NCBI GenBank assembly: GCA_053919585.1 | Contig: CM132793.1 | Direction: 5' to 3' (one strand) | Length of the DNA stretch: 64,000 nt | Origin: Euprymna scolopes | Lineage: Eukaryota | Shown here: positions 39,781 to 59,999 of the stretch, in pieces | Position numbering within the stretch: the first letter of the stretch is position 1 | Layout of the letters: the number at the start of each line of letters is the position of its first letter | Made by a program: the position numbers and the translations under genes | The notes under the pieces: generated by a model | What the model was told of the DNA's origin: nothing | What the model saw: the letters and a program-made list of their open reading frames with translations, nothing else | Database searches by the model: none

Positions 39781-39832
39781 TTGAATTTGTCATATAAGTA
39801 TGTCAAACTTCGCTTGAAGCATTGTTTATTGG

Positions 39833-40200
39833 ATAAAAGGTATGTTTGAAGGCTCGTCAATGCAGGAATTATTCAGTCCTTGTAAACAGATAAATAAATA
39901 AATAATGATAATTCAATAGTTTTCTATAAATATTTATTTACCTGATTATAGATGGTATATTCTCAACTGTAGATGGTATATTGCGGCAGCATAAAGAGTA
40001 GATATACATTTTCTACTTTTTGAAAACGGGAATTGCTCCTGAAAGTATTTGAAGAATGTACCATCTACAGTCGAGAATATACCATGTATACTCAGGTAAA
40101 TAAATATTTATTGAAAACTATCGAATTATCATTATTTATTTATCTGTTTACAAGGACTGAATAATTCCTTCACTGACAAGCCTTCAAACATACCTTTTAT
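39833..40200. repeat. Foldback inverted repeat with ~150-bp arms and a ~70-bp spacer
   Basis: 39833-39982 (ataaaaggtatgtttgaaggc...gtagatggtatatt) is the reverse complement of 40055-40200. Confidence 0.92.
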
Positions 40201-40285
40201 ACATAAGAATTAATTTGTGTAATATATATATATGATTGTTGAGCTGGATTACATCCAACGATATGAAATAAAATAGAGGTGAAAG

Positions 40286-40342
40286 GACCTGAATACTCAA
40301 CGTTTCACCCGATTTATGCAGGCTTTTTCAAGAGGGATGGTC
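40286..40342 (-). ncRNA. Type I hammerhead ribozyme motif (U3-A8 core variant), left arm of the palindrome
   Basis: Minus strand reads GACC-AUCC-CUC UUGAAAA A GCCUG-CAUAAAU-CGGGU GAAA CGUU GAG-UAUUCA-GGUC. This gives stem I with an internal loop, stem II, and a palindromic ACGU stem III. Confidence 0.65.
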
Positions 40343-40354
40343 ATTGACGTCAAT

Positions 40355-40410
40355 GACCATCCCTCTTGAAAAAGCCCGCATAAAGTGGGCGAAAGTTGAG
40401 TATTCAGGTC
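40355..40410 (+). ncRNA. Type I hammerhead motif, right arm of the palindrome, with one nucleotide missing in stem III
   Basis: GACC-AUCC-CUC UUGAAAA A GCCCGC-AUAAA-GUGGGC GAAA GUU GAG-UAUUCA-GGUC. Confidence 0.5.
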
Positions 40411-40605
40411 CTTTCACCTCCATTTTATTTCATATATATATATATATATATAATGTATGTATGTATGTACAGATGTGTGTGTGTATGTGCATATATATAT
40501 TCCATAATTTAATTCTTTCAATATCTGTCCTTTAATTCAATTAATAATACATGTTAGTTATGTTGATATTCTTTATTTTCATTCATTGAATCTTTATCTT
40601 TTCAG

Positions 40606-41459: not shown

Positions 41460-44400
41460 ATTTTTTTTTTTTTTTAATTTTTTTTTATTACATTTTCACC
41501 CCAAACAAGACAAATTGCCACTTTGGTGTAGGGGGCTACTATCAGGGGCAACAACTACTGGGGTACTATGTAGGGATTTAGGCAGCAAGATGTCGGTTCA
41601 CGTTACACTTGAACTTCTGTACGTCAGTACTGTTGGAGAAGCAGGGACCTGGAATGGAATTCCAGAGTCTAGCGGTTCTGGGGAAGAAACTATTGGAGTA
41701 AAAAGCTCTTTTACATCTAGGAATCTCTACAGTGTGGTTGTGGGATTTAGCAGCCTGTCGGGTTTGTCGAGGGTGCTCACGTCGTGGGAGCACAAGTGAT
41801 TGCAGTTCGTCAAAGCATTCACCACTTAAATACTTGTAGAAAAGGCAGAGGGATACAACATTTCGTCGATAGGACAGAGGCTGAAGCTTAGATGCCAGTT
41901 CAGGGCCTATCAGGTTTGCGACTCTCTTTTGAACCTTGTCAAGGAGCGAGAGACTAGTAGCAGATGCACCAGCCCAGATGTGACTGCAATACTCCATACA
42001 TGGGCGAATGGTGGCCTTATAGAGGTACAGAATACTTTCGGGTGTTAGTAGTTGTCTAGCACGGTAGAGAGAGCCCACCTTTCTTGCAGCGGCCCTGGCA
42101 ATGCCTTCAATGTAATTGTTCCAACTCCTGTTTCCTGTGAACGTTAGGCCAAGGAGTTTGAAAGATGTACTCTCAGATAAAGAGTCGTTGACAATTGCTA
42201 TAGGTGGTAGAGAGGGTTTCTTGTAATTATTGAATGAAACTAGTTTAGTCTTGGCAGCATTGAATGCGACCAACCACTTTTGTCCCCATTCCACCACAGA
42301 TTGGAGGTCTTCCTCTAGTGTTTCTGCCATTTCTTTAGAAATGTGTTCATTCGTCTTCCTGTCGTGCCTGCCATAGAGTGTAGTGTCATCAGCATATATA
42401 CCCATCTCAGAGGCAATTTTGTCGGGGAGGTCATTTATGAATATCAGGAACAATAGAGGTCCAAGGATAGAACCCTGGGGCACCCCCGCATTTATATCAT
42501 ATTGTTTAGATGTACGACCGTCGAGGATAACCTGGATTTTTCTCTTATCTAAGAAGGATTTAATTATGTTAAATATTCTACCAGTGATACCGTATGATCT
42601 AATTTTCCTGAGGAGACCCTCATGCCATACCCTGTCAAAAGCCTTAGATATATCTAGAGCTACCGCTCTGCCCTCCCCCGCTTTGTCCAGTGAATGGTAT
42701 ATACGTTCAGAGATTACAGTTAGGATGTCTGCTGTGGAACGGGCTTGTCTAAATCCATATTGTTGGGCAGTCAGAAGTTTAGCATCTGTAAGGTGCCGGA
42801 CTAGAGTATGGTTAATTAAGGTCTCAAATATTTTGGCAAAAAGTGGGAGGAGGCTAATGGGGCGATAATTTGATGGGTCAGTCCTTTCGCCAGAATTCTT
42901 GAATACTGGTACAACAGAAGCAGTTTTCCAACAGCCCGGAAAGCATGATTCATTAAGGCATTTGTTGTAGAGTTTGGAGAGAACTGGAGCTACTTCGGCT
43001 GAGCACTTTTTAATAGCACAGCTGGGATAAGATCGGGTCCACATGCTTTTGAAGTGTCAAGGTTTTTATGATAGCATGCACCTGAGCAGGGGTGGTTTTC
43101 AGATCGTCTAGCGTGGCGTCTGTCCGCATAGGAAAGTCAGGTAGGGGATGGTTGGAAGGGTCCAGTGTGGATTTTGAGGCAAACCAACTGGCAAGCATGT
43201 TAGCCTTGTCGGTTGCTGAGGAGACAACCTTGTGATTGTTGGTTAGTGGGGGAATTGTTGATTGCCCATTATTTACTACACTGTTGTAGATTTTCCAGAA
43301 GTCTCGAGTTCCTAGTTTTTGTGCTTCGATGCGCTTTTTAGTGGTTTCCGTAAATTCTCTCTTAGCTGTCGCTATTTCTTTCTTAACGTTATTTCTAGCT
43401 TCTATATACTTCAGTCTGTTTGAACTGGACTTATGTCGGTTAAACCTACGGTATGCATGCTGCTTTTGAGCAATGGCAGTTACGCAAGTCAACGTAAACC
43501 ATTGGGGAGAGTGGGGCTTACTATAAAATTTCCGCATGGGAACATGCGCTTCGATTGCAGTTTTGAACCAGTCAGTGGTTTCGTTTGCACACTGTTCAGC
43601 AGGGAGAGAAAAAATATTTCTCTTGGGGTATCTCTGATTAGTTCCCTGATGGCTTCCCAATCAGCCTTTTTATAATATCTCGTTGTTTTGAGCACTGGCT
43701 CTTCAGTTTTGGCTCTAGGGTTTAGGGCGATTTCAACCATTATCACTGCATGATCAGCGTTCCCGAGTGGGCTGTGGGCCTTTGTTATGCAGTCATCGGG
43801 AACTGTGGTCAAAAACAGATCTAGAAGTGATGCGTGTTGTTCTTCCTGGTCAGGGAAACGGGTTGGAAACATAACAATTTGTGATAAGGAGTGAGATATA
43901 GTGAAGCTATGAGTTGTGCTGCCCGCTGCATCTGTGTAAGTAGAGAATCCAAGCCAGTTTTTGTGGTGGACATTAAAGTCACCAAATACATGTATTTGTG
44001 CGCTAGTGTCAAGGGACAGTGCCGTGTTTATGCTGTCAGAGACTTTGTTTATTATGGTGCAGTCCTGAGTCGAGAGAGAGCGGTAGAGAAAATAATAGTA
44101 GCTAATATTGTGTTGCATGTTTAGTCTTGATCATCTGTTTCTAGGTTTGTTTCTCTAGTCAGGGGGAGGGTATTACGAATGTAAACTTCAAGTCTGTGCA
44201 TATGTCTGTCAGAGTCCTTACGGCAGAGTGGGAGATATCCAGGCACGTTAAAGTGGTTAGAAGGGATGGAGGAGTGTAGGTTAGTCTCACTTAGTGCTAA
44301 GATATCCGGGGTATTTGTTAAGAGAAATGCTTCAACATCAGCTAAATTAGTTCTAAGCCCACGGATATTTGTGAATGCAAGCCTCAAGGGAGGAGGCAAG

Positions 44401-44547
44401 TTGAATTTGTTTGTCCCTAAGCCTGGTTTAAGCTTATTTTTAGATTGTACTGTCGTCATATTTTTTTTAAAGAGTTTCGGTTTAGGTAAGGGGGAGCTAA
44501 ACAAGAGGTTATGCAGAGCATCAGACATGCATCACAAGTAGACCATA
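41460..44547 (-). mobile_element. Near full-length CR1/L2-group LINE (APE endonuclease + RT), frameshifted, antisense in a POMGNT1 intron
   Basis: ORF pieces 44121-44528 (TNIRGL, LSET), 43489-44118 (GDFNVHH, LDLF, ADH), 43010-43660 and 41578-43044 (NYRPISLL, QYGFR, LDISKAFD, GVPQGS, YADD, MEYCSHIW). Poly-A tail is seen as poly-T at 41461-41490. Candidate TSD cggcat at 41454-41459 and 44548-44553. Confidence 0.95.
41578..43044 (-). pseudogene. Open RT-domain segment (488 aa) of the LINE ORF2, cut off from the APE domain by frameshifts
   Basis: Complete RT motifs including YADD; the upstream segments lie in different frames. Confidence 0.9.
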
Positions 44548-49431: not shown

Positions 49432-52097
49432 GTAAGTATATGCTATTTTTCTACAATTTATTGTTGATGCTTCCTTTGTGATACGACAGAAAACTGTTCT
49501 TTTGCCTCTGTTGTCATAAGCAAATTTGTATAGAAACCATTTTGAGAGCTCATATGATCTTGACTGGAAGATGTCTATCCCAATAATGCTTATATATTAA
49601 CAACCTTATAATACACACAGATGTGATGTCATACCACTAAGGTAAAATAAATTGTTTGATTGTCCATTAAAATAGAAAACAAGAATGACTTTAAATATAA
49701 ATTTTATTTCAATTTTATTAATAAAAATATATAATTTTTCAATATCCATTCCAATTTTACAGATATGTTTTTATTAAATTTTAAAATAAATTTCAAGCTT
49801 GGTTACATTTCTTCTCTCCATTTCTTTACATAACTAGCAAGAATATATAGAGGAGTGTTGGAATGATTAATCGGAATTTGGAATCGAAAAACTGACTTTT
49901 TGGGAAATCAGAATTGGAAAAATTTGTGCTTATTTTTCAATGCTCAAAATGATTTTTTTTCATTGTTTTTATTTCTTTGATTTTGTTTAAAACTTAATTT
50001 TCCACAACTCATATTAATGATGAAATAGTAAATATTTATAGATTATAAACTATTAGTAAAACTAAAATCTATAGGTCACACCCATAAGTGTATTTTTACA
50101 TTTACAAAAAAAAATGTGCACATATTATATGGGTTTTTGCGGTTCTCTGACCCTCTTATATGCAAAGAACAACTGCGGGTAGAAATTTAAAAAGAATTGG
50201 AATTGGGAATTTAGAAGAGAATTGGTAATTGTATTGGAATCAGGAAAACTTTTTGGAATCATGACATGATTAAATGACGGAAGCAGAGAGGTGGAACACC
50301 TTTTCATATAGTAATAGTCTGGTTTAAGCATGAATATTAGATTTGCTCACTCATTTTTTGTTATTTTATAGCAATTCAGAGATTTAAAACGTTTTTCTTA
50401 CTTTGCTTTCATTTATTGCCTTTCTAATTCAAACCACTTTCAGACACTCTTTGAAGTATTTTTCAAACTATTTTTTTCAAACTATTTTTCTACTTAATCC
50501 ATTTTGTCTATCTTTGTAGATTTATTTGTTTAATTATTTTGTGCTTTCATTTCTGTAACCAAAATTATGTTGCAGTTCTTAAACACTTATATTTTCACAT
50601 TTTTCTGTTTTGAGTATTAAGAATAATTTAACATTATCAAATATGTTTGCTATGCGCACCTATTTGACATAAGAGACAAACAAATGTTTGTGTTCTGTGT
50701 TGCATGATAGTGAATGTTGGATCCAATTAGAATTGGAGATAAATTTCAACTGGAGAAAAGTTAAAATGTTATGGTTTGCAAAATCTGAGATAATTCCTAT
50801 AACATCTCTCTACTAAAAATTAAAAATACTTGTATTCAACTGTTAAGATCATGTAAACTGTCGTAGTGGGTGGATTAAAAAATATACAAAAATTGTGATC
50901 CCTGGGTAGAAATAGGTGGTGGTGAAGAGGGCATCCACGTGAAAGATCCAAGATTAGCTAATCAGAGTAAAAGAGGATAAGAAAATGACCACTGCTTGTG
51001 AGAAGATTGAAGTCAAATGATGATGACTTTAGATTAAATTTAATGCCTTTTGAGTTTTACATTTCCATAAGGCAAGTATGAACAACATAATTTTCTATTG
51101 GAAAATATAAATTAAATGATGGGATTATGAATCTGGATTATTATATCCACAATGTTCAGCATCCTATCGCTGAGAATCAATTTTGTGGAGAAATTCCAAG
51201 CAAGCTAAGAATTTAATGACCCAATAGTAAACTTCAAAGACAACCATACATTTTTTTTTTTTTGCTTTTTTTTTCTTAATAATAGTCTGTTTGATGGCAT
51301 TATGTGGGGCAGTATTGCCTTAGCCACTGAAACTGTTACCACTCCCAGTTGAAGGAGGACAGATTCTCGCATATTCTATCATGCATATGTTGAATACCTA
51401 CTAGACACTATCCGTGACTGTCTCTGGTCTCTCTGTGCAGGGGTTTGTTAAGACAACCTGACATGAGGATTGTTTCCCCTTACAAATAAATGCTGACCAT
51501 ATATTCAAAGTAACATAGTATTCAAATAAAATCCCCTTGGTATGGCTACATCACACTGACTTATGCGACGAATGTACACCTTCTCAAAGTGATATTACCT
51601 ATAGTAATAGCACTAAGTTCATTAGAGTAGTTGAATTCTGGTCTTGGAATCTGGTACAACTTTATTATAAAAATGTGAGATTTTATGGCATCTAATAACT
51701 TTTGATAAACCACAAACCACAAGAAAGAAATACTATAACACAATTAACTGTCCAGTTGTGGAGAGGGAAATTAATGTTCATTTCTTTATAAAAATAACAT
51801 TTGAGATATAAAGAACTTTAACAGAATATTTCTCATATAGAAATCAAGTCTCCAAAAGGACTAACACTTGATTTCTGATAAATTGAAGTAAAAAAAAAAA
51901 AAAAATGTTGTAGACCTACTTAATAGCACATAGTTTATTGTCTGGCATTCTTCAAACAATTTGTATTAAGAAAATTATTGTTAAAGAAAATCATAAGAAA
52001 ATGTCAGTCAGCATAGACTATTGGCATTTTTTCTCTTTTGTTCCCATTTTTCCTCTTTATTTTTTTAAATTGCAAAATAAAATTTTTTCTTTTGCAG

Positions 52098-52219
52098 CTG
52101 GAGTGAGCACTGCTTTCCGTGAAAACGCACAGAAGGGGAAGGAGAGACTTGGAAAGACACTGTCCGTAATCGTTGTTTCCAGCAAAGATTCAGTCAGTGT
52201 TTCCGTAGATGGAACGGCC
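52098..52219 (+). CDS. POMGNT1: POMGNT1 coding exon 3 (start of stem), SGVSTAFRENAQKGKERLGKTLSVIVVSSKDSVSVSVDGTA
   Basis: Acceptor ttcttttgcag, donor gtaagt, 122 nt restoring phase 0. Resembles human [20 protein letters not shown]. Confidence 0.9.
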
Positions 52220-52784
52220 GTAAGTTTTCATTCTTTTTAAAGAGTAAATTTTAGCTTTTGTTGAATTCATTATTGTGTATCTAAAAGTACAATTTATCTT
52301 TGGAAGGTAAATTTGTTGATGAAGGAAAGCAACTTATGAATGCATGATGTTGTTGATTATAGAGACCAGAAGACAATTCATATTGTTTACTTTTCATAAC
52401 TGTGATTAAAATGTTCTCCGGATGCCTTTCTCTTGGACAGATAGTTTGAACATGTTCAAGAAGTGCTTATTATGCACTCTAAAACAATTTCAAATACTTA
52501 AAAATTTTAATTTTGAGAATATTTATTAGTGTCCAATATTTATTGTTGAAATTTCACAAAAATCAGAGACATTTGAATTTTTCTCAAAGGCTTTTGCACC
52601 ATTTTTACCTCCTTTGTAGAAAACTAAATTAAACTAACTGCAACCCATATTTGGAACCCTTATGCCTAGCAGCTGTGTTCCAGAATTCATAATGATCAGT
52701 TAATTAGTTTAGGAGTAAATCCTATACATACAAACATATACACATACCTAAGTTTATGTAAATATATTGGTTTTATATATATTA

Positions 52785-58988: not shown

Positions 58989-59330
58989 CATATTTTAAGT
59001 GAAAATGGGGGTCATCTATTTCTTCAGTAGTGGATGGGCATATATGAGAGAAAGGTATTGAGACAACAGCTTCAACTCTAAACCATAAGAAAGAGGAGCA
59101 GAATAATATGCATAGCCTCATGGGGGAGGGGGGCGGTATTGTATAACAAATAATAGTTTAATCTTAAATGAAGAAAATTTTTATGCTTGTCCAGAATATC
59201 CCCTCCCCAGAGAGATTCTGGATATGTGCCAAATTTTTGTCATTAAATAGAGAGGAAATATATGTATATGTATTTGAAAATTATTTTGTATATTGATATC
59301 ATTAGAAATTATGTGAAATCTTTGTTTCAG

Positions 59331-59396
59331 GTTTTGCATGATGAAGAAGTTGAGAAAAACCGTGGCATTCATGTAATCGTCTTAAATCAAGCCACT
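59331..59396 (+). CDS. POMGNT1: POMGNT1 coding exon 4 (stem/lectin-like domain), VLHDEEVEKNRGIHVIVLNQAT; the gene continues beyond the window
   Basis: Acceptor tttgtttcag, donor gtaagt, 66 nt. RGIHVIVLNQAT is identical to the recalled human POMGNT1 motif. Confidence 0.95.
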
Positions 59397-59999
59397 GTAA
59401 GTAATTTTACTGAATTCTTCAAATCTTCTATGGCTAAAAAAAAATCTTTTCTTTTTGTTGTATTTTTACTTTTTATTTTATTTTTATATCTTTTGTATTT
59501 TTTATAACTTTATACTTTTTTATTCCTTGTTTTTGACTGTTCAATTTTTAATTTATTTTACCTTTTTATTTTTTATTCTTTTATTATGTATACTTTGTTT
59601 GCAATTTGAATACTCTTTTTAATATATACAGACTTAACATCAGCCCTCTATTTCAAGAAAACCCCATTTCTATTTATACCCTATAACTCCATATGATCAT
59701 CAGAGCATCTACCTTTATTCTCTTCTATTCTTTTCTCGATAGTAAAGGCACATCTCCGCATATGAACACATACATTGAATATATACCCTATAACCTACCA
59801 TAGCAAACTACGCAACCACTTTACATATTACTTATATCCACAATGTGGTATCAACAATTTTCTTCCTGTATCACATTAATTACTGTAATTCTCCTATCTT
59901 CCTCCCTCCATAGTTTCAATTTATTACCTTTTTCCTCTCGCTCCCAATGTAGTTTTCGTTAGACGTTGCATTTCTATTATGTTACCTAACATCTTCTCC

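What the first reader, a model, noticed from the sequence alone, without database searches (positions are those of the whole stretch)
40261..40435. Spacerless palindrome carrying a variant hammerhead ribozyme on each strand, 170 bp upstream of the first POMGNT1 coding exon
Seen: a 175-bp head-to-head palindrome centred on TGACGTCA, a perfect CRE formed at the junction. Reading outward, each arm gives a type I hammerhead fold: stem I with an internal loop (GACC/GGUC and CUC/GAG), core UUGAAAA, a 5-6 bp stem II and GAAA. The minus-strand arm has a loopless palindromic ACGU stem III and a GUU cleavage triplet. The arms differ mainly in stem II, yet both versions still pair, which points to a real RNA structure. 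Known: U3-A8 is a compensatory variant of the C3-G8 core pair; minimal type I hammerheads with palindromic stem III typify Penelope-like elements and non-LTR retrozymes and act as dimers; Penelope-like elements often insert as inverted tail pairs. Inference: this is an ambisense double-ribozyme cassette inside the likely POMGNT1 pre-mRNA. It could switch between an ~87-bp dsRNA hairpin (ADAR or Dicer substrate) and self-cleaving folds, or act as a DNA cruciform or CREB site.
Basis: partly seen in the sequence, partly recalled or inferred. Interest (0 to 1): 0.8.

Follow-up and report, generated by a model that had tools for sequence, protein, structure and literature searches.

The report
Inverted Penelope-element tails with fossil hammerheads
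The 175-bp palindrome is a common insertion product of a Penelope-like retrotransposon: two copies of the element's last 87 bases joined head to head, each carrying that element's known "minimal hammerhead" motif, both now mutated. It is ordinary for this genome and shows no sign of being a special switch for the nearby gene.

Summary
Window 40261-40435 is a spacerless palindrome centred on TGACGTCA, with arms 93% alike, and each arm can be drawn as a type I hammerhead with a UUGAAAA core.

It is not specific to this locus. Each arm is the last 87 nt of the 3' UTR of a canonical RT + GIY-YIG Penelope-like element (PLE) that inserts into (TA)n. It shows the PLE hallmarks: inverted 5'-truncated copies and a 27-nt tail on one side only.

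The family consensus has every peculiarity published for PLE minimal hammerheads: an extra base after A9, a G10.1-C11.1 pair, a loop-less palindromic ACGU helix III, a long helix II, and the U3-A8 core variant. Genome counts with helix II intact are 673 U3-A8 copies, 4,797 U3.G8 copies and 18 canonical copies. About half of the sampled copies lie in head-to-head pairs.

In the window, each arm has three private changes from the consensus, five of the six at CpG sites. This explains why the arms "differ mainly in stem II yet still pair". The + arm has lost C15.2. Any transcript spanning both arms folds into a -136 kcal/mol hairpin.

Rfam finds no hammerhead here. Cleavage, RNA editing and CRE function could not be tested because read laying failed.

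Verdict: a new member of a known kind, of low-to-moderate interest. Earlier notes of this scan reported Penelope/hammerhead remnants elsewhere in this genome.

The parts
40222..40233 (.). Left (TA)n flank: remnant of the target microsatellite.
   Evidence: Sequence. Family copies are flanked by (TA)n or (CA)n at nearly every locus.
40234..40260 (-). 27-nt PLE 'tail' extension, present on this side only.
   Evidence: It matches the family tail in all but about 2 of its 27 bases; the pairwise alignment reports 4 differing columns of 29, two of them terminal end gaps. In 13 palindromic loci read (L001, L011, L052, L055, L056, L058, L060, L062, L067, L068, L072, L076, L080) no locus showed a tail on both arms, as far as the printed flanks reach. 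In L016, L022 and L066 the tail runs on into the PLE ORF.
40261..40348 (-). Left arm: the last 88 nt of the PLE 3' UTR, read on the - strand.
   Evidence: 94-95% identity to family copies. It has 3 private changes from the U3-A8 subfamily consensus, two of them CpG to TpG in helix II.
40286..40342 (-). Minimal hammerhead motif on the - strand, with U3-A8 core. Helix II now has two G.U pairs, including 10.1-11.1. The predicted scissile bond lies between U17 (40299) and G1.1 (40298).
   Evidence: Model R1 scores it 86.1 bits, against 93.5 for the consensus. It passes my min-HHR descriptor at 40296-40334 only if position 11.1 may be U.
40345..40352 (.). TGACGTCA junction octamer (CRE-like), made by blunt head-to-head joining of two GTCA... 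arm starts.
   Evidence: Sequence. The exact 26-mer junction occurs at 3 loci in the genome, with near-identical versions at roughly 20 more.
40349..40435 (+). Right arm: the last 87 nt of the PLE 3' UTR, read on the + strand, without a tail.
   Evidence: 100% self hit, and 95-97% identity to copies at other loci. It has 3 private changes from the consensus: TC to GT, and loss of C15.2.
40355..40410 (+). Degenerate hammerhead motif on the + strand. The ACGU helix III is reduced to A-GU. The position equivalent to the cut site lies between 40397 and 40398.
   Evidence: Model R1 scores it 80.3 bits, with a gap at model position 41. It fails the min-HHR descriptor.
40432..40452 (.). Right (TA)n flank: the target microsatellite.
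   Evidence: repeat family D1.

Best explanation
The palindrome is a dead insertion product of a canonical endonuclease-bearing Penelope-like element (PLE: RT followed by a C-terminal GIY-YIG nuclease). This family integrates into (TA)n microsatellites. It very often leaves two 5'-truncated copies head to head, tails outward, with a short extra tail on one side only.

Here both copies stop at the same base, 87 nt from the element's 3' end, so the junction has no spacer and happens to read TGACGTCA.

The last 87 nt of this PLE's 3' UTR contain its minimal type I hammerhead. The layout is: helix I, then a core of UUGAAAA or UUGAAGA, one bulged A, a 5-bp G10.1-C11.1 helix II, GAA, and a loop-less palindromic A-CG-U helix III, with the cut expected after U17. 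In the element's life cycle this motif presumably trims read-through or multimeric PLE transcripts. Published work on this class indicates that it acts as a dimer of two same-strand copies.

At this locus the motif is a passenger. The two copies were identical at insertion and have each since gained 3 of 88 private mutations, mostly at CpG sites. The + strand copy has lost a helix III base. The two motifs lie on opposite strands, so they cannot dimerise in one transcript. Any RNA spanning both arms folds into a long hairpin instead. The only plausible local effect is that of any intronic or upstream inverted repeat (double-stranded RNA or a DNA cruciform), and that is untested.

What is shown: repeat identity, PLE linkage, motif anatomy, copy numbers, the mutation pattern and fold energies.
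What is inferred: ribozyme activity of the family, the mechanism of palindrome formation, and the lack of function at this locus.
For: 1. Repeat family. The arm is repeated genome-wide at 92-97% identity. Model R1 finds 150 of 150 scored hits at 87.7 bits or more.

2. PLE linkage.
- In most copies the arm continues upstream into about 500 nt of shared sequence.
- That sequence is directly preceded by an RT C-terminus/GIY-YIG ORF in 14 held loci: L003, L005, L006, L007, L008, L013, L014, L020, L064, L066, L070, L071, L074 and L075 (the last two overlap one region). This comes from tblastn with P0017. P0017 carries RVT_1 plus GIY-YIG.
- In L016, L022 and L066, arm + tail is followed after 11 nt by an ATG. 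In L022 the reading continues into a PLE RT with ADKGG, RPIIS, SLDIESLYTNIP and YIDD motifs (Pfam RVT_1, E = 6.5e-12).

3. PLE insertion hallmarks, as described in PMC8557442.
- (TA)n flanks.
- A one-sided 27-nt tail.
- Inverted 5'-truncated partners. Among the first 100 listed U3.G8 copies there are 24 (-,+) head-to-head pairs within 5 kb, against 1 (+,-), 2 (-,-) and 0 (+,+). Ten of the pairs are tight, with 40-88 nt offset; the window's offset is 63.

4. Motif.
- The consensus meets every idiosyncrasy listed for PLE minimal hammerheads in PMC4209133: a nucleotide between 9 and 10.1, G10.1-C11.1, palindromic 15.2-16.2, a large helix II, and the U3-A8 variant (alignment).
- A descriptor coded from those features hits the consensus and gives 0 hits in 20 Mb of composition-matched random sequence.

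5. Decay at this locus. Each arm differs from the consensus at 3 of 88 positions, at non-overlapping sites, and 5 of the 6 changes are at CpG. R1 scores are 86.1 and 80.3 bits against 93.5 for the consensus.

6. Energetics. The hairpin is -135.9 kcal/mol. Single-arm folds are -12 to -19 kcal/mol.
Against: - No Rfam hammerhead model matches at E <= 10, even for the 18 copies with a canonical CUGAAGA core.
- The predicted minimum-energy fold of a single arm uses a register-shifted helix (CUUGA/UUGAG) that sequesters core bases. Its z-scores are unremarkable, 0 to -2.6.
- Covariation within the family is negligible: 96.8% of cells paired against 96.4% in shuffles, with 2 compensatory cells.
- The dominant subfamily has a U3.G8 wobble, whose activity is unknown.
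- Published PLE minimal hammerheads cleave poorly in vitro (PMC4209133).
- No RNA data could be laid on the locus, so expression, cleavage and editing are all untested.
- My descriptor was written after I had seen the sequence.
Confidence: 0.75

Rival explanations
1. One reading: a functional ambisense double-ribozyme cassette in the POMGNT1 pre-mRNA that toggles between a dsRNA hairpin and self-cleaving folds, or acts as a CREB site, and so regulates the gene.
For: - The motif anatomy is real.
- The gene downstream on the + strand is POMGNT1-like.
- The hairpin is very stable, so it would be a plausible ADAR or Dicer substrate if transcribed.
- TGACGTCA is a perfect CRE consensus by sequence.
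Against: - The same structure is a generic insertion form at many loci.
- Both arms carry neutral-looking CpG decay.
- The + strand (gene-sense) copy lacks C15.2.
- The two motifs are on opposite strands, so no dimer can form within one RNA.
- The hairpin is roughly 120 kcal/mol more stable than the ribozyme fold.
- The CRE arises automatically from the junction, and the same junction is present in the two other loci that share the exact 26-mer, L052 and L060.
- The first-exon assignment is unverified.
Confidence: 0.05
2. The hammerhead resemblance is coincidental. The conserved GC hairpin near the 3' end is simply the stem-loop that the PLE reverse transcriptase recognises for target-primed reverse transcription, and no ribozyme exists in this family.
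For: - No Rfam hit.
- Deviant core: U3, A8 or a U.G wobble, plus an extra A.
- The minimum-energy fold is not the hammerhead fold.
- There is essentially no covariation.
- PLE clades without hammerheads proliferate well (PMC8557442).
- A 3' stem-loop shared with the autonomous element is expected for any retroelement.
Against: - All 11 core positions are either canonical or show the one published compensatory pair.
- The bulge, G10.1-C11.1, the palindromic 15.2/16.2 and the NUH site sit in the correct order and spacing, in the very compartment (pLTR/3' end of a PLE) where such motifs are known (PMC4209133).
- The descriptor gives 0 hits in 20 Mb of random sequence.
Confidence: 0.15
3. The palindromic ~200-bp unit (two arms plus one tail) is itself a non-autonomous mobile element. 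It would be transcribed as a hairpin RNA and copied as a unit by the PLE machinery, rather than being formed afresh at each insertion.
For: - The same junction recurs at about 20 loci, always in (TA)n and with at most one tail.
- Arms within a locus share subfamily variants, for example L052 and L056.
Against: - Only 3 loci share the exact 26-mer junction.
- Junction offsets form several classes: 40-41, 45, 49, 54, 63-64, 68 and 88 nt.
- Palindromes occur in every sequence haplotype of the family, including U3-A8, U3.G8 and the TATTCAGG/TATCCAGG variants. This fits repeated de novo formation from whichever template was active.
- Inverted pairs grade continuously up to several kb of spacing.
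Confidence: 0.1
4. A MITE or foldback DNA transposon (Stowaway-like, TA target) made of two terminal inverted repeats.
For: It is a perfect-looking short palindrome flanked by TA-rich sequence. A genuine MITE-like foldback lies immediately upstream at 39830-40203.
Against: - The arms are the 3' end of an RT/GIY-YIG retroelement.
- Most copies are single arms continuous with the 3' UTR and ORF.
- The flanks are long microsatellites, not a 2-bp duplication.
- The tail is on one side only.
Confidence: 0.02

Closest known systems
Minimal hammerhead ribozymes (min-HHR) in the pLTRs of Penelope-like elements, including the U3-A8 core variant of Schistosoma mansoni Cercyon (Cervera & de la Pena 2014, PMC4209133)
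   Same: - Type I topology, with a short helix I and an enlarged helix II.
- An unpaired base between A9 and G10.1.
- A G10.1-C11.1 pair.
- No loop 3, with palindromic 15.2-16.2 (ACGU), which implies action as a dimer.
- U3-A8 in place of C3-G8.
- Located at the terminal repeat/3' end of an RT + GIY-YIG element.
- Thousands of dispersed copies, with some pairs close together on opposite strands.
   Different: - Different host: a mollusc with a 5.9-Gb genome.
- The most abundant subfamily has a U3.G8 wobble (4,797 copies) rather than a Watson-Crick 3-8 pair. Canonical C3-G8 is almost absent (18 copies).
- Activity was not tested here.
Canonical EN+ Penelope-like elements and their insertion architecture (Evgen'ev & Arkhipova 2005; Craig et al. 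2021, PMC8557442)
   Same: - RT with a DKG-type motif, followed by a C-terminal GIY-YIG nuclease.
- Partial tandem copies (pLTR).
- An inverted 5'-truncated copy abutting the 5' end.
- A 30-40-bp tail at one end only (27 nt here).
- Insertion into (TA)n, as reported for the Hydra and Naiad clades.
   Different: - The clade (Neptune, Poseidon, Hydra and so on) was not determined.
- Here both members of the pair are truncated to the last 87 nt, giving a spacerless 175-bp palindrome.
- Such tight pairs account for about 20% of sampled copies.
Non-LTR retrozymes: tandem type I hammerhead repeats expressed as circular RNAs (Cervera & de la Pena 2020, PMC7229834; bioRxiv 10.64898/2026.07.22.740005)
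   Same: A type I hammerhead with a weak palindromic helix III, related to PLE pLTRs. This genome also holds such arrays, for example C8:10432194-10435515 with a ~410-nt period.
   Different: The family in the window is not tandem. Among 27 close pairs there were 0 (+,+) and 2 (-,-). Rfam Hammerhead_1 does not match it, and it is linked to a coding PLE.
Inverted-repeat retroelement pairs (for example inverted Alu pairs) as intramolecular dsRNA substrates of ADAR
   Same: If transcribed, the two arms form an ~87-bp near-perfect duplex. Any effect on the host transcript would work in the same way as these pairs.
   Different: There is no evidence here of transcription or editing. The pair has no spacer and derives from a single PLE insertion event rather than two independent insertions.

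Membership tests
Hammerhead ribozyme, canonical type I (Rfam RF00163 Hammerhead_1) | Scores at or above the family's covariance-model threshold. | tested here: not met
   There was no hammerhead family hit at E <= 10 on 221 nt or 5 kb around the site, and none at gathering score over the whole window. Family copies with a canonical core also gave no hit. The same genome has 73 scored RF00163 hits above threshold in a different family.
Hammerhead ribozyme, canonical type I (Rfam RF00163 Hammerhead_1) | Conserved core C3 U4 G5 A6 N7 G8 A9 ... G12 A13 A14, A15.1-U16.1, H17. | tested here: not met
   U4, G5, A6, A9, G12, A13, A14, A15.1, U16.1 and U17 are present. Position 3 is U, and position 8 is A (673 copies) or G (4,797 copies). 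One extra A follows A9. Canonical C3-G8 occurs in only 18 copies.
Hammerhead ribozyme, canonical type I (Rfam RF00163 Hammerhead_1) | Site-specific self-cleavage 3' of H17. | not testable with these tools
   Laying reads failed.
PLE minimal hammerhead (Cervera & de la Pena 2014) | Lies in the pLTR/terminal region of an RT + GIY-YIG Penelope-like element, on the sense strand. | tested here: met
   The motif lies 25-80 nt from the 3' end of the ~500-nt 3' UTR that follows the GIY-YIG ORF. It also lies in the partial upstream copy that precedes the ORF in L016, L022 and L066.
PLE minimal hammerhead (Cervera & de la Pena 2014) | An unpaired nucleotide between A9 and 10.1, and a conserved G10.1-C11.1 pair. 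| tested here: met
   The consensus reads UUGAAAA-A-GCCCG...CGGGC-GAA. In the window, the + arm keeps G-C, and the - arm now has G.U at 10.1-11.1.
PLE minimal hammerhead (Cervera & de la Pena 2014) | No loop 3, with positions 15.2-16.2 palindromic so that two copies can build helix III. | tested here: met
   A-CG-U followed by U17 is found in the consensus and in the window's - arm. The + arm lost C15.2, so the feature is not met there.
PLE minimal hammerhead (Cervera & de la Pena 2014) | The 3-8 core pair is kept as a Watson-Crick pair (C-G, or the published U-A covariant). | tested here: inconclusive
   It is met in the window's subfamily (U3-A8, 673 copies). The 7-fold larger subfamily has a U3.G8 wobble.
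PLE minimal hammerhead (Cervera & de la Pena 2014) | Helices supported by compensatory changes among consensus families. | tested here: inconclusive
   In 43 distinct sequences, 96.8% of cells are paired against 96.4% in shuffles, with 2 compensatory cells. The copies are too young (97% column identity) to be informative.
Penelope-like element, EN+ (canonical, C-terminal GIY-YIG) | RT of PLE type followed by a GIY-YIG endonuclease with cysteines between GIY and YIG. | tested here: met
   L022:2252-3088 matches RVT_1 at E = 6.5e-12 and carries ADKGG and YIDD motifs. Its homologue P0017 carries RVT_1 plus GIY-YIG and contains GVYCIPCKDCKLKYIGET. P0017 aligns by tblastn directly upstream of the 3' UTR in 14 held loci (two of them overlapping).
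Penelope-like element, EN+ (canonical, C-terminal GIY-YIG) | Insertion architecture: partial tandem (pLTR), an inverted 5'-truncated copy, a one-sided 30-40-bp tail, and microsatellite targets. | tested here: met
   Supported. The tail is 27 nt and the targets are (TA)n.
Non-LTR retrozyme | Head-to-tail tandem arrays of 150-450-bp units, each with a type I hammerhead. | tested here: not met
   Of 27 close pairs in the sample, 24 are head to head, 0 are (+,+) and 2 are (-,-), the latter at 460 and 2,858 nt spacing.
MITE / foldback DNA transposon | Terminal inverted repeats with a fixed target-site duplication and no RT-linked parent. | tested here: not met
   The arms are retroelement 3' ends. 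Single-arm copies predominate and continue into an RT/EN ORF.

The most novel reading that the evidence does not exclude
The U3.G8 and U3-A8 minimal hammerheads of this very successful PLE family (about 5,500 copies with an intact helix II) may still be catalytically competent in vivo. That would show that a wobble at the 3-8 core pair is tolerated in nature. In addition, the hundreds of tight head-to-head PLE tails this family leaves in genes could form a distinct, abundant class of near-perfect intronic dsRNA hairpins, feeding ADAR or Dicer pathways in this mollusc. The copy upstream of or within POMGNT1 would be one such substrate.
Probability: 0.1. Interest if true: 0.55.

Novelty: new member of a known kind. 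Interest (0 to 1): 0.3.

Why it matters
For the locus itself it matters little. The striking palindrome, the "two ribozymes" and the CRE are all by-products of one ordinary retroelement insertion.

At family level it adds three things.
- It is a clean, quantified example of the still unexplained PLE integration chemistry: about half of the copies are in head-to-head pairs, and the tail is on one side only.
- It shows a natural series at the hammerhead 3-8 core pair: 18 C-G, 4,797 U.G and 673 U-A copies. This makes it easy to test whether PLE hammerheads need a Watson-Crick 3-8 pair at all.
- It warns annotators that Rfam models miss this class of hammerhead entirely.

Tried and rejected
- RNA evidence. 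Expression, cleavage ends, A-to-I editing and the POMGNT1 exon structure therefore remain untested. The look-up of sequencing runs showed only that poly(A) RNA-seq assemblies labelled mollusc or invertebrate hold 18-41% of the sampled words of the family's 3' module. That is weak evidence that the family is transcribed somewhere.
- Rfam at permissive thresholds gave only microRNA-hairpin look-alikes caused by the palindrome. I rejected these as artefacts of any long hairpin.
- Covariation within the family is uninformative.
- The search for more divergent relatives with my own covariance model returned only near-consensus copies.
- I considered that the constant arm start marks a transcription start, because TATATATAG lies 31 nt upstream in full copies. 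I rejected this as the main explanation because tight pairs show several junction offsets and the exact junction occurs at only 3 loci.
- The MITE reading was rejected.
- Pfam gave nothing for the two POMGNT1-like exon ORFs. One of them matched PDB POMGNT1 weakly and the other did not match at all.
- I first took the ~510-nt upstream sequence for a separate non-autonomous element. tblastn showed that it is the 3' UTR of the coding PLE.
Full report
**1. Observation**

Window 40261-40435 is a genuine spacerless palindrome. The repeat finder reports arm pairs 40261-40304/40392-40435 (95% complementary) and 40303-40348/40349-40394 (91%, 0 nt between them). A direct alignment of the two arms shows 6 differences in 88 columns. 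The centre reads TGACGTCA at 40345-40352. As RNA, the region folds into one hairpin of -135.9 kcal/mol, with z = -22 against shuffles.

- There is one additional A between the core and helix II.
- The + arm has lost the C of ACGU.
- Rfam reports no hammerhead family at E <= 10, on 5 kb or on 221 nt. It reports only microRNA look-alikes, as any long hairpin would produce.

**2. The arm is a repeat, and the repeat is the 3' end of a Penelope-like element**

The genome is 5.9 Gb. The 87-nt arm has many copies at 92-97% identity. In most of them it is not palindromic but continues upstream into about 500 nt of shared AT-rich sequence.

The copies end either at ...TTTCATA followed by (TA)n, or run on for 27 more bases (the 'tail') before (TA)n or (CA)n.

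In L016, L022 and L066 the tail is followed after 11 nt by an ATG. In L022 the reading continues, with a frameshift and one stop, into a reverse transcriptase with the PLE signature motifs ADKGG, RPIIS, SLDIESLYTNIP and YIDD. Pfam gives RVT_1 at E = 6.5e-12. Database homologues include P0017, which carries RVT_1 followed by GIY-YIG with cysteines inside the GIY...YIG block.

tblastn with P0017 places the RT C-terminus and GIY-YIG ORF directly upstream of the ~500-nt region in 14 further held loci, two of which overlap one region. So the arm is the last 87 nt of the 3' UTR of a canonical endonuclease-bearing PLE.

**3. The palindrome is a standard insertion form of this family**

The literature on PLEs describes partial tandems (pLTRs), an inverted 5'-truncated copy abutting the 5' end, a 30-40-bp tail at one end only, and microsatellite targets, with (TA)n for some clades (PMC8557442). 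All of these are seen here.

- The central 80 nt of the palindrome finds dozens of other palindromic loci.
- Those I read (L052, L055, L056, L058, L060, L062) have the same or nearly the same junction, sit in (TA)n, and carry the tail on one side only.
- A second junction class shares a single copy of the 9-mer GTCAATGAC (L011, L069, L076).
- The exact 26-mer junction occurs at only 3 loci.

I tallied strand and spacing for the first 100 listed copies of the major subfamily. There are 24 (-,+) head-to-head pairs within 5 kb, against 1 (+,-), 2 (-,-) and 0 (+,+). Ten of the pairs are tight, with offsets of 40-88 nt; the window's offset is 63.

The window therefore holds a very common product. 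Both members of the pair happen to be truncated to 87 nt, and the CRE-like octamer follows automatically from joining two GTCA ends.

**4. The motif**

An alignment of 53 copies gives this consensus layout: GACC-AUCC-CUC | UUGAAAA | A | GCCCG-CAUAAAU-CGGGC | GAA | A-CG-U | U | GAG-UAUUCA-GGUC.

Cervera & de la Pena (PMC4209133) defined PLE 'minimal hammerheads' by exactly these peculiarities:
- a conserved G10.1-C11.1 pair;
- a large helix II and a short helix I;
- no loop 3, with palindromic 15.2-16.2, so that two copies build helix III together.

They also reported a U3-A8 covariant of the C3-G8 core pair in Schistosoma Cercyon, and pairs of such motifs on opposite strands.

A descriptor I coded from these features hits the consensus and gave no hit in 20 Mb of composition-matched random sequence. 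The caveat is that I wrote it after seeing the sequence.

Exact-pattern counts with helix II intact are 673 copies for UUGAAAA-A (U3-A8), 4,797 for UUGAAGA-A (U3.G8 wobble) and 18 for CUGAAGA-A (canonical). The 18 canonical copies belong to the G8 subfamily and look like sporadic T-to-C changes or junction artefacts.

Rfam's Hammerhead_1 does not recognise even these copies. It does find a different, canonical hammerhead family in this genome, including ~410-nt tandem arrays.

Membership in the canonical Rfam family therefore fails. Membership in the published PLE minimal-hammerhead class is met on every structural criterion I could test. The exception is that the majority subfamily has a wobble at the 3-8 pair. 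Catalysis is untested. Published members of this class cleave poorly in vitro and only as dimers.

**5. Why the arms differ in stem II**

Each window arm differs from the U3-A8 subfamily consensus at 3 of 88 positions, and the sites do not overlap. This is as expected if the arms were identical at insertion and decayed independently.

Five of the six changes hit CpG dinucleotides. All four CpGs of the arm lie in the helix II/III segment. C-to-T changes in a stem necessarily leave G.U pairs. Family-wide pair counts show no meaningful covariation either.

My covariance model scores the arms at 86.1 bits (-) and 80.3 bits (+), against 93.5 for consensus copies. The - arm passes the descriptor only if 11.1 may be U. 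The + arm fails it.

**6. Function at this locus**

A single arm folds at -12 to -19 kcal/mol with unremarkable z-scores. Its minimum-energy structure uses a register-shifted helix that sequesters core bases. The two-arm hairpin is about 120 kcal/mol more stable.

The two motifs are on opposite strands, so one transcript contains only one sense copy next to its perfect antisense. That is the worst arrangement for a ribozyme that needs a same-strand partner.

The downstream gene on the + strand is POMGNT1-like: the exon near 59.33 kb matches PDB 5ggj_A at E = 0.0025. The + strand motif, the one sense to that gene, is the copy that lost C15.2.

I could not confirm the proposed first coding exon, nor that the palindrome is transcribed. 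A dsRNA or cruciform effect typical of any inverted repeat remains possible but has no evidence behind it.

**7. How the palindromes arise (inference only)**

The facts to be explained are:
- the outward-pointing tails;
- at most one tail per pair;
- arms within a pair that share subfamily variants;
- junctions clustered in the first ~25 nt of the arm, some of them sharing the palindromic 9-mer.

These fit a model in which both ends of the nuclease-cut (TA)n target prime, or the nascent cDNA copies back on itself, followed by joining at or near short self-complementary sequence. Craig et al. attribute such structures to unresolved properties of the GIY-YIG nuclease.

A palindromic unit that is itself mobile is a weaker alternative. 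Palindromes occur in every haplotype of the family, and their offsets vary.

**8. Verdict**

The Penelope/hammerhead identification is supported at family level. The locus-specific regulatory 'cassette' is not supported. This is a new member of a known kind.

Two family-level points are modestly interesting: the dominance of a U3.G8 core, and the very high frequency of head-to-head tails.

Earlier notes of this scan (s1-288630, s1-295599, s1-295776) had already flagged Penelope/hammerhead remnants elsewhere in this genome. I used them only as leads.

Noticed in passing
window 39830-40203: There is a separate ~374-bp foldback directly upstream of the PLE palindrome. Its arms are 39830-39901/40132-40203 (94% complementary) and 39894-39982/40055-40143 (93%), around a 72-nt centre. 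It looks like a MITE-type element unrelated to the PLE.
   Followed up: no
window 41578-44528 (- strand): A run of long ORFs (488, 216, 209 and 135 aa) shows reverse-transcriptase-like (…YADDTTLY…) and endonuclease-like sequence. This is a non-LTR (LINE) retrotransposon lying antisense between the palindrome and the POMGNT1-like exons. I identified it by eye only.
   Followed up: no
G000:C8:10432194-10435515 (L035-L043) and dispersed copies L031-L050: A different, canonical type I hammerhead family scores 53-57 bits on Rfam Hammerhead_1 (CUGAUGA core, CUCGAG palindromic loop 3). It forms a tandem array with a ~410-nt period, resembling a retrozyme. Its dispersed copies are preceded by a tRNA-like B-box (GGTTCGAATCC).
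   Followed up: partly
whole genome G000 (pattern counts): Core variants of the PLE hammerhead with helix II intact number 4,797 U3.G8, 673 U3-A8 and 18 C3-G8. The U3-A8 class shows more varied loop-2 sequences (CATAATA, CATAATT, CACTAAA and others), which suggests older or multiple lineages.
   Followed up: partly
family copies, e.g. L019:1468-1500; absent from the window's truncated arms: In full copies a TATATATAG box sits 31 nt upstream of the base where the window's arms begin (GTCAATGACC). This may be an internal promoter of the pLTR. It does not by itself explain the junctions, because the offsets vary.
   Followed up: partly
window 59262-59504 (+) and 51938-52237 (+): These are exon-like ORFs resembling the POMGNT1 stem domain. 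The first matches PDB 5ggj_A/5ggf_A (E = 0.0025 and 0.012). The second gave no PDB or Pfam hit. The gene therefore lies on the + strand, at least 12-19 kb downstream of the palindrome.
   Followed up: partly
Rfam at gathering score finds nothing in the window, and the canonical-hammerhead unit from L036 has no BLAST match in the window.
   Followed up: partly
L062 (G000:C44:13630213-13630341): A palindromic copy carries an extra partial duplication of one arm next to the junction, and its central CpG has decayed (GACATCGATGAC). This shows that these palindromes rearrange after insertion.
   Followed up: no
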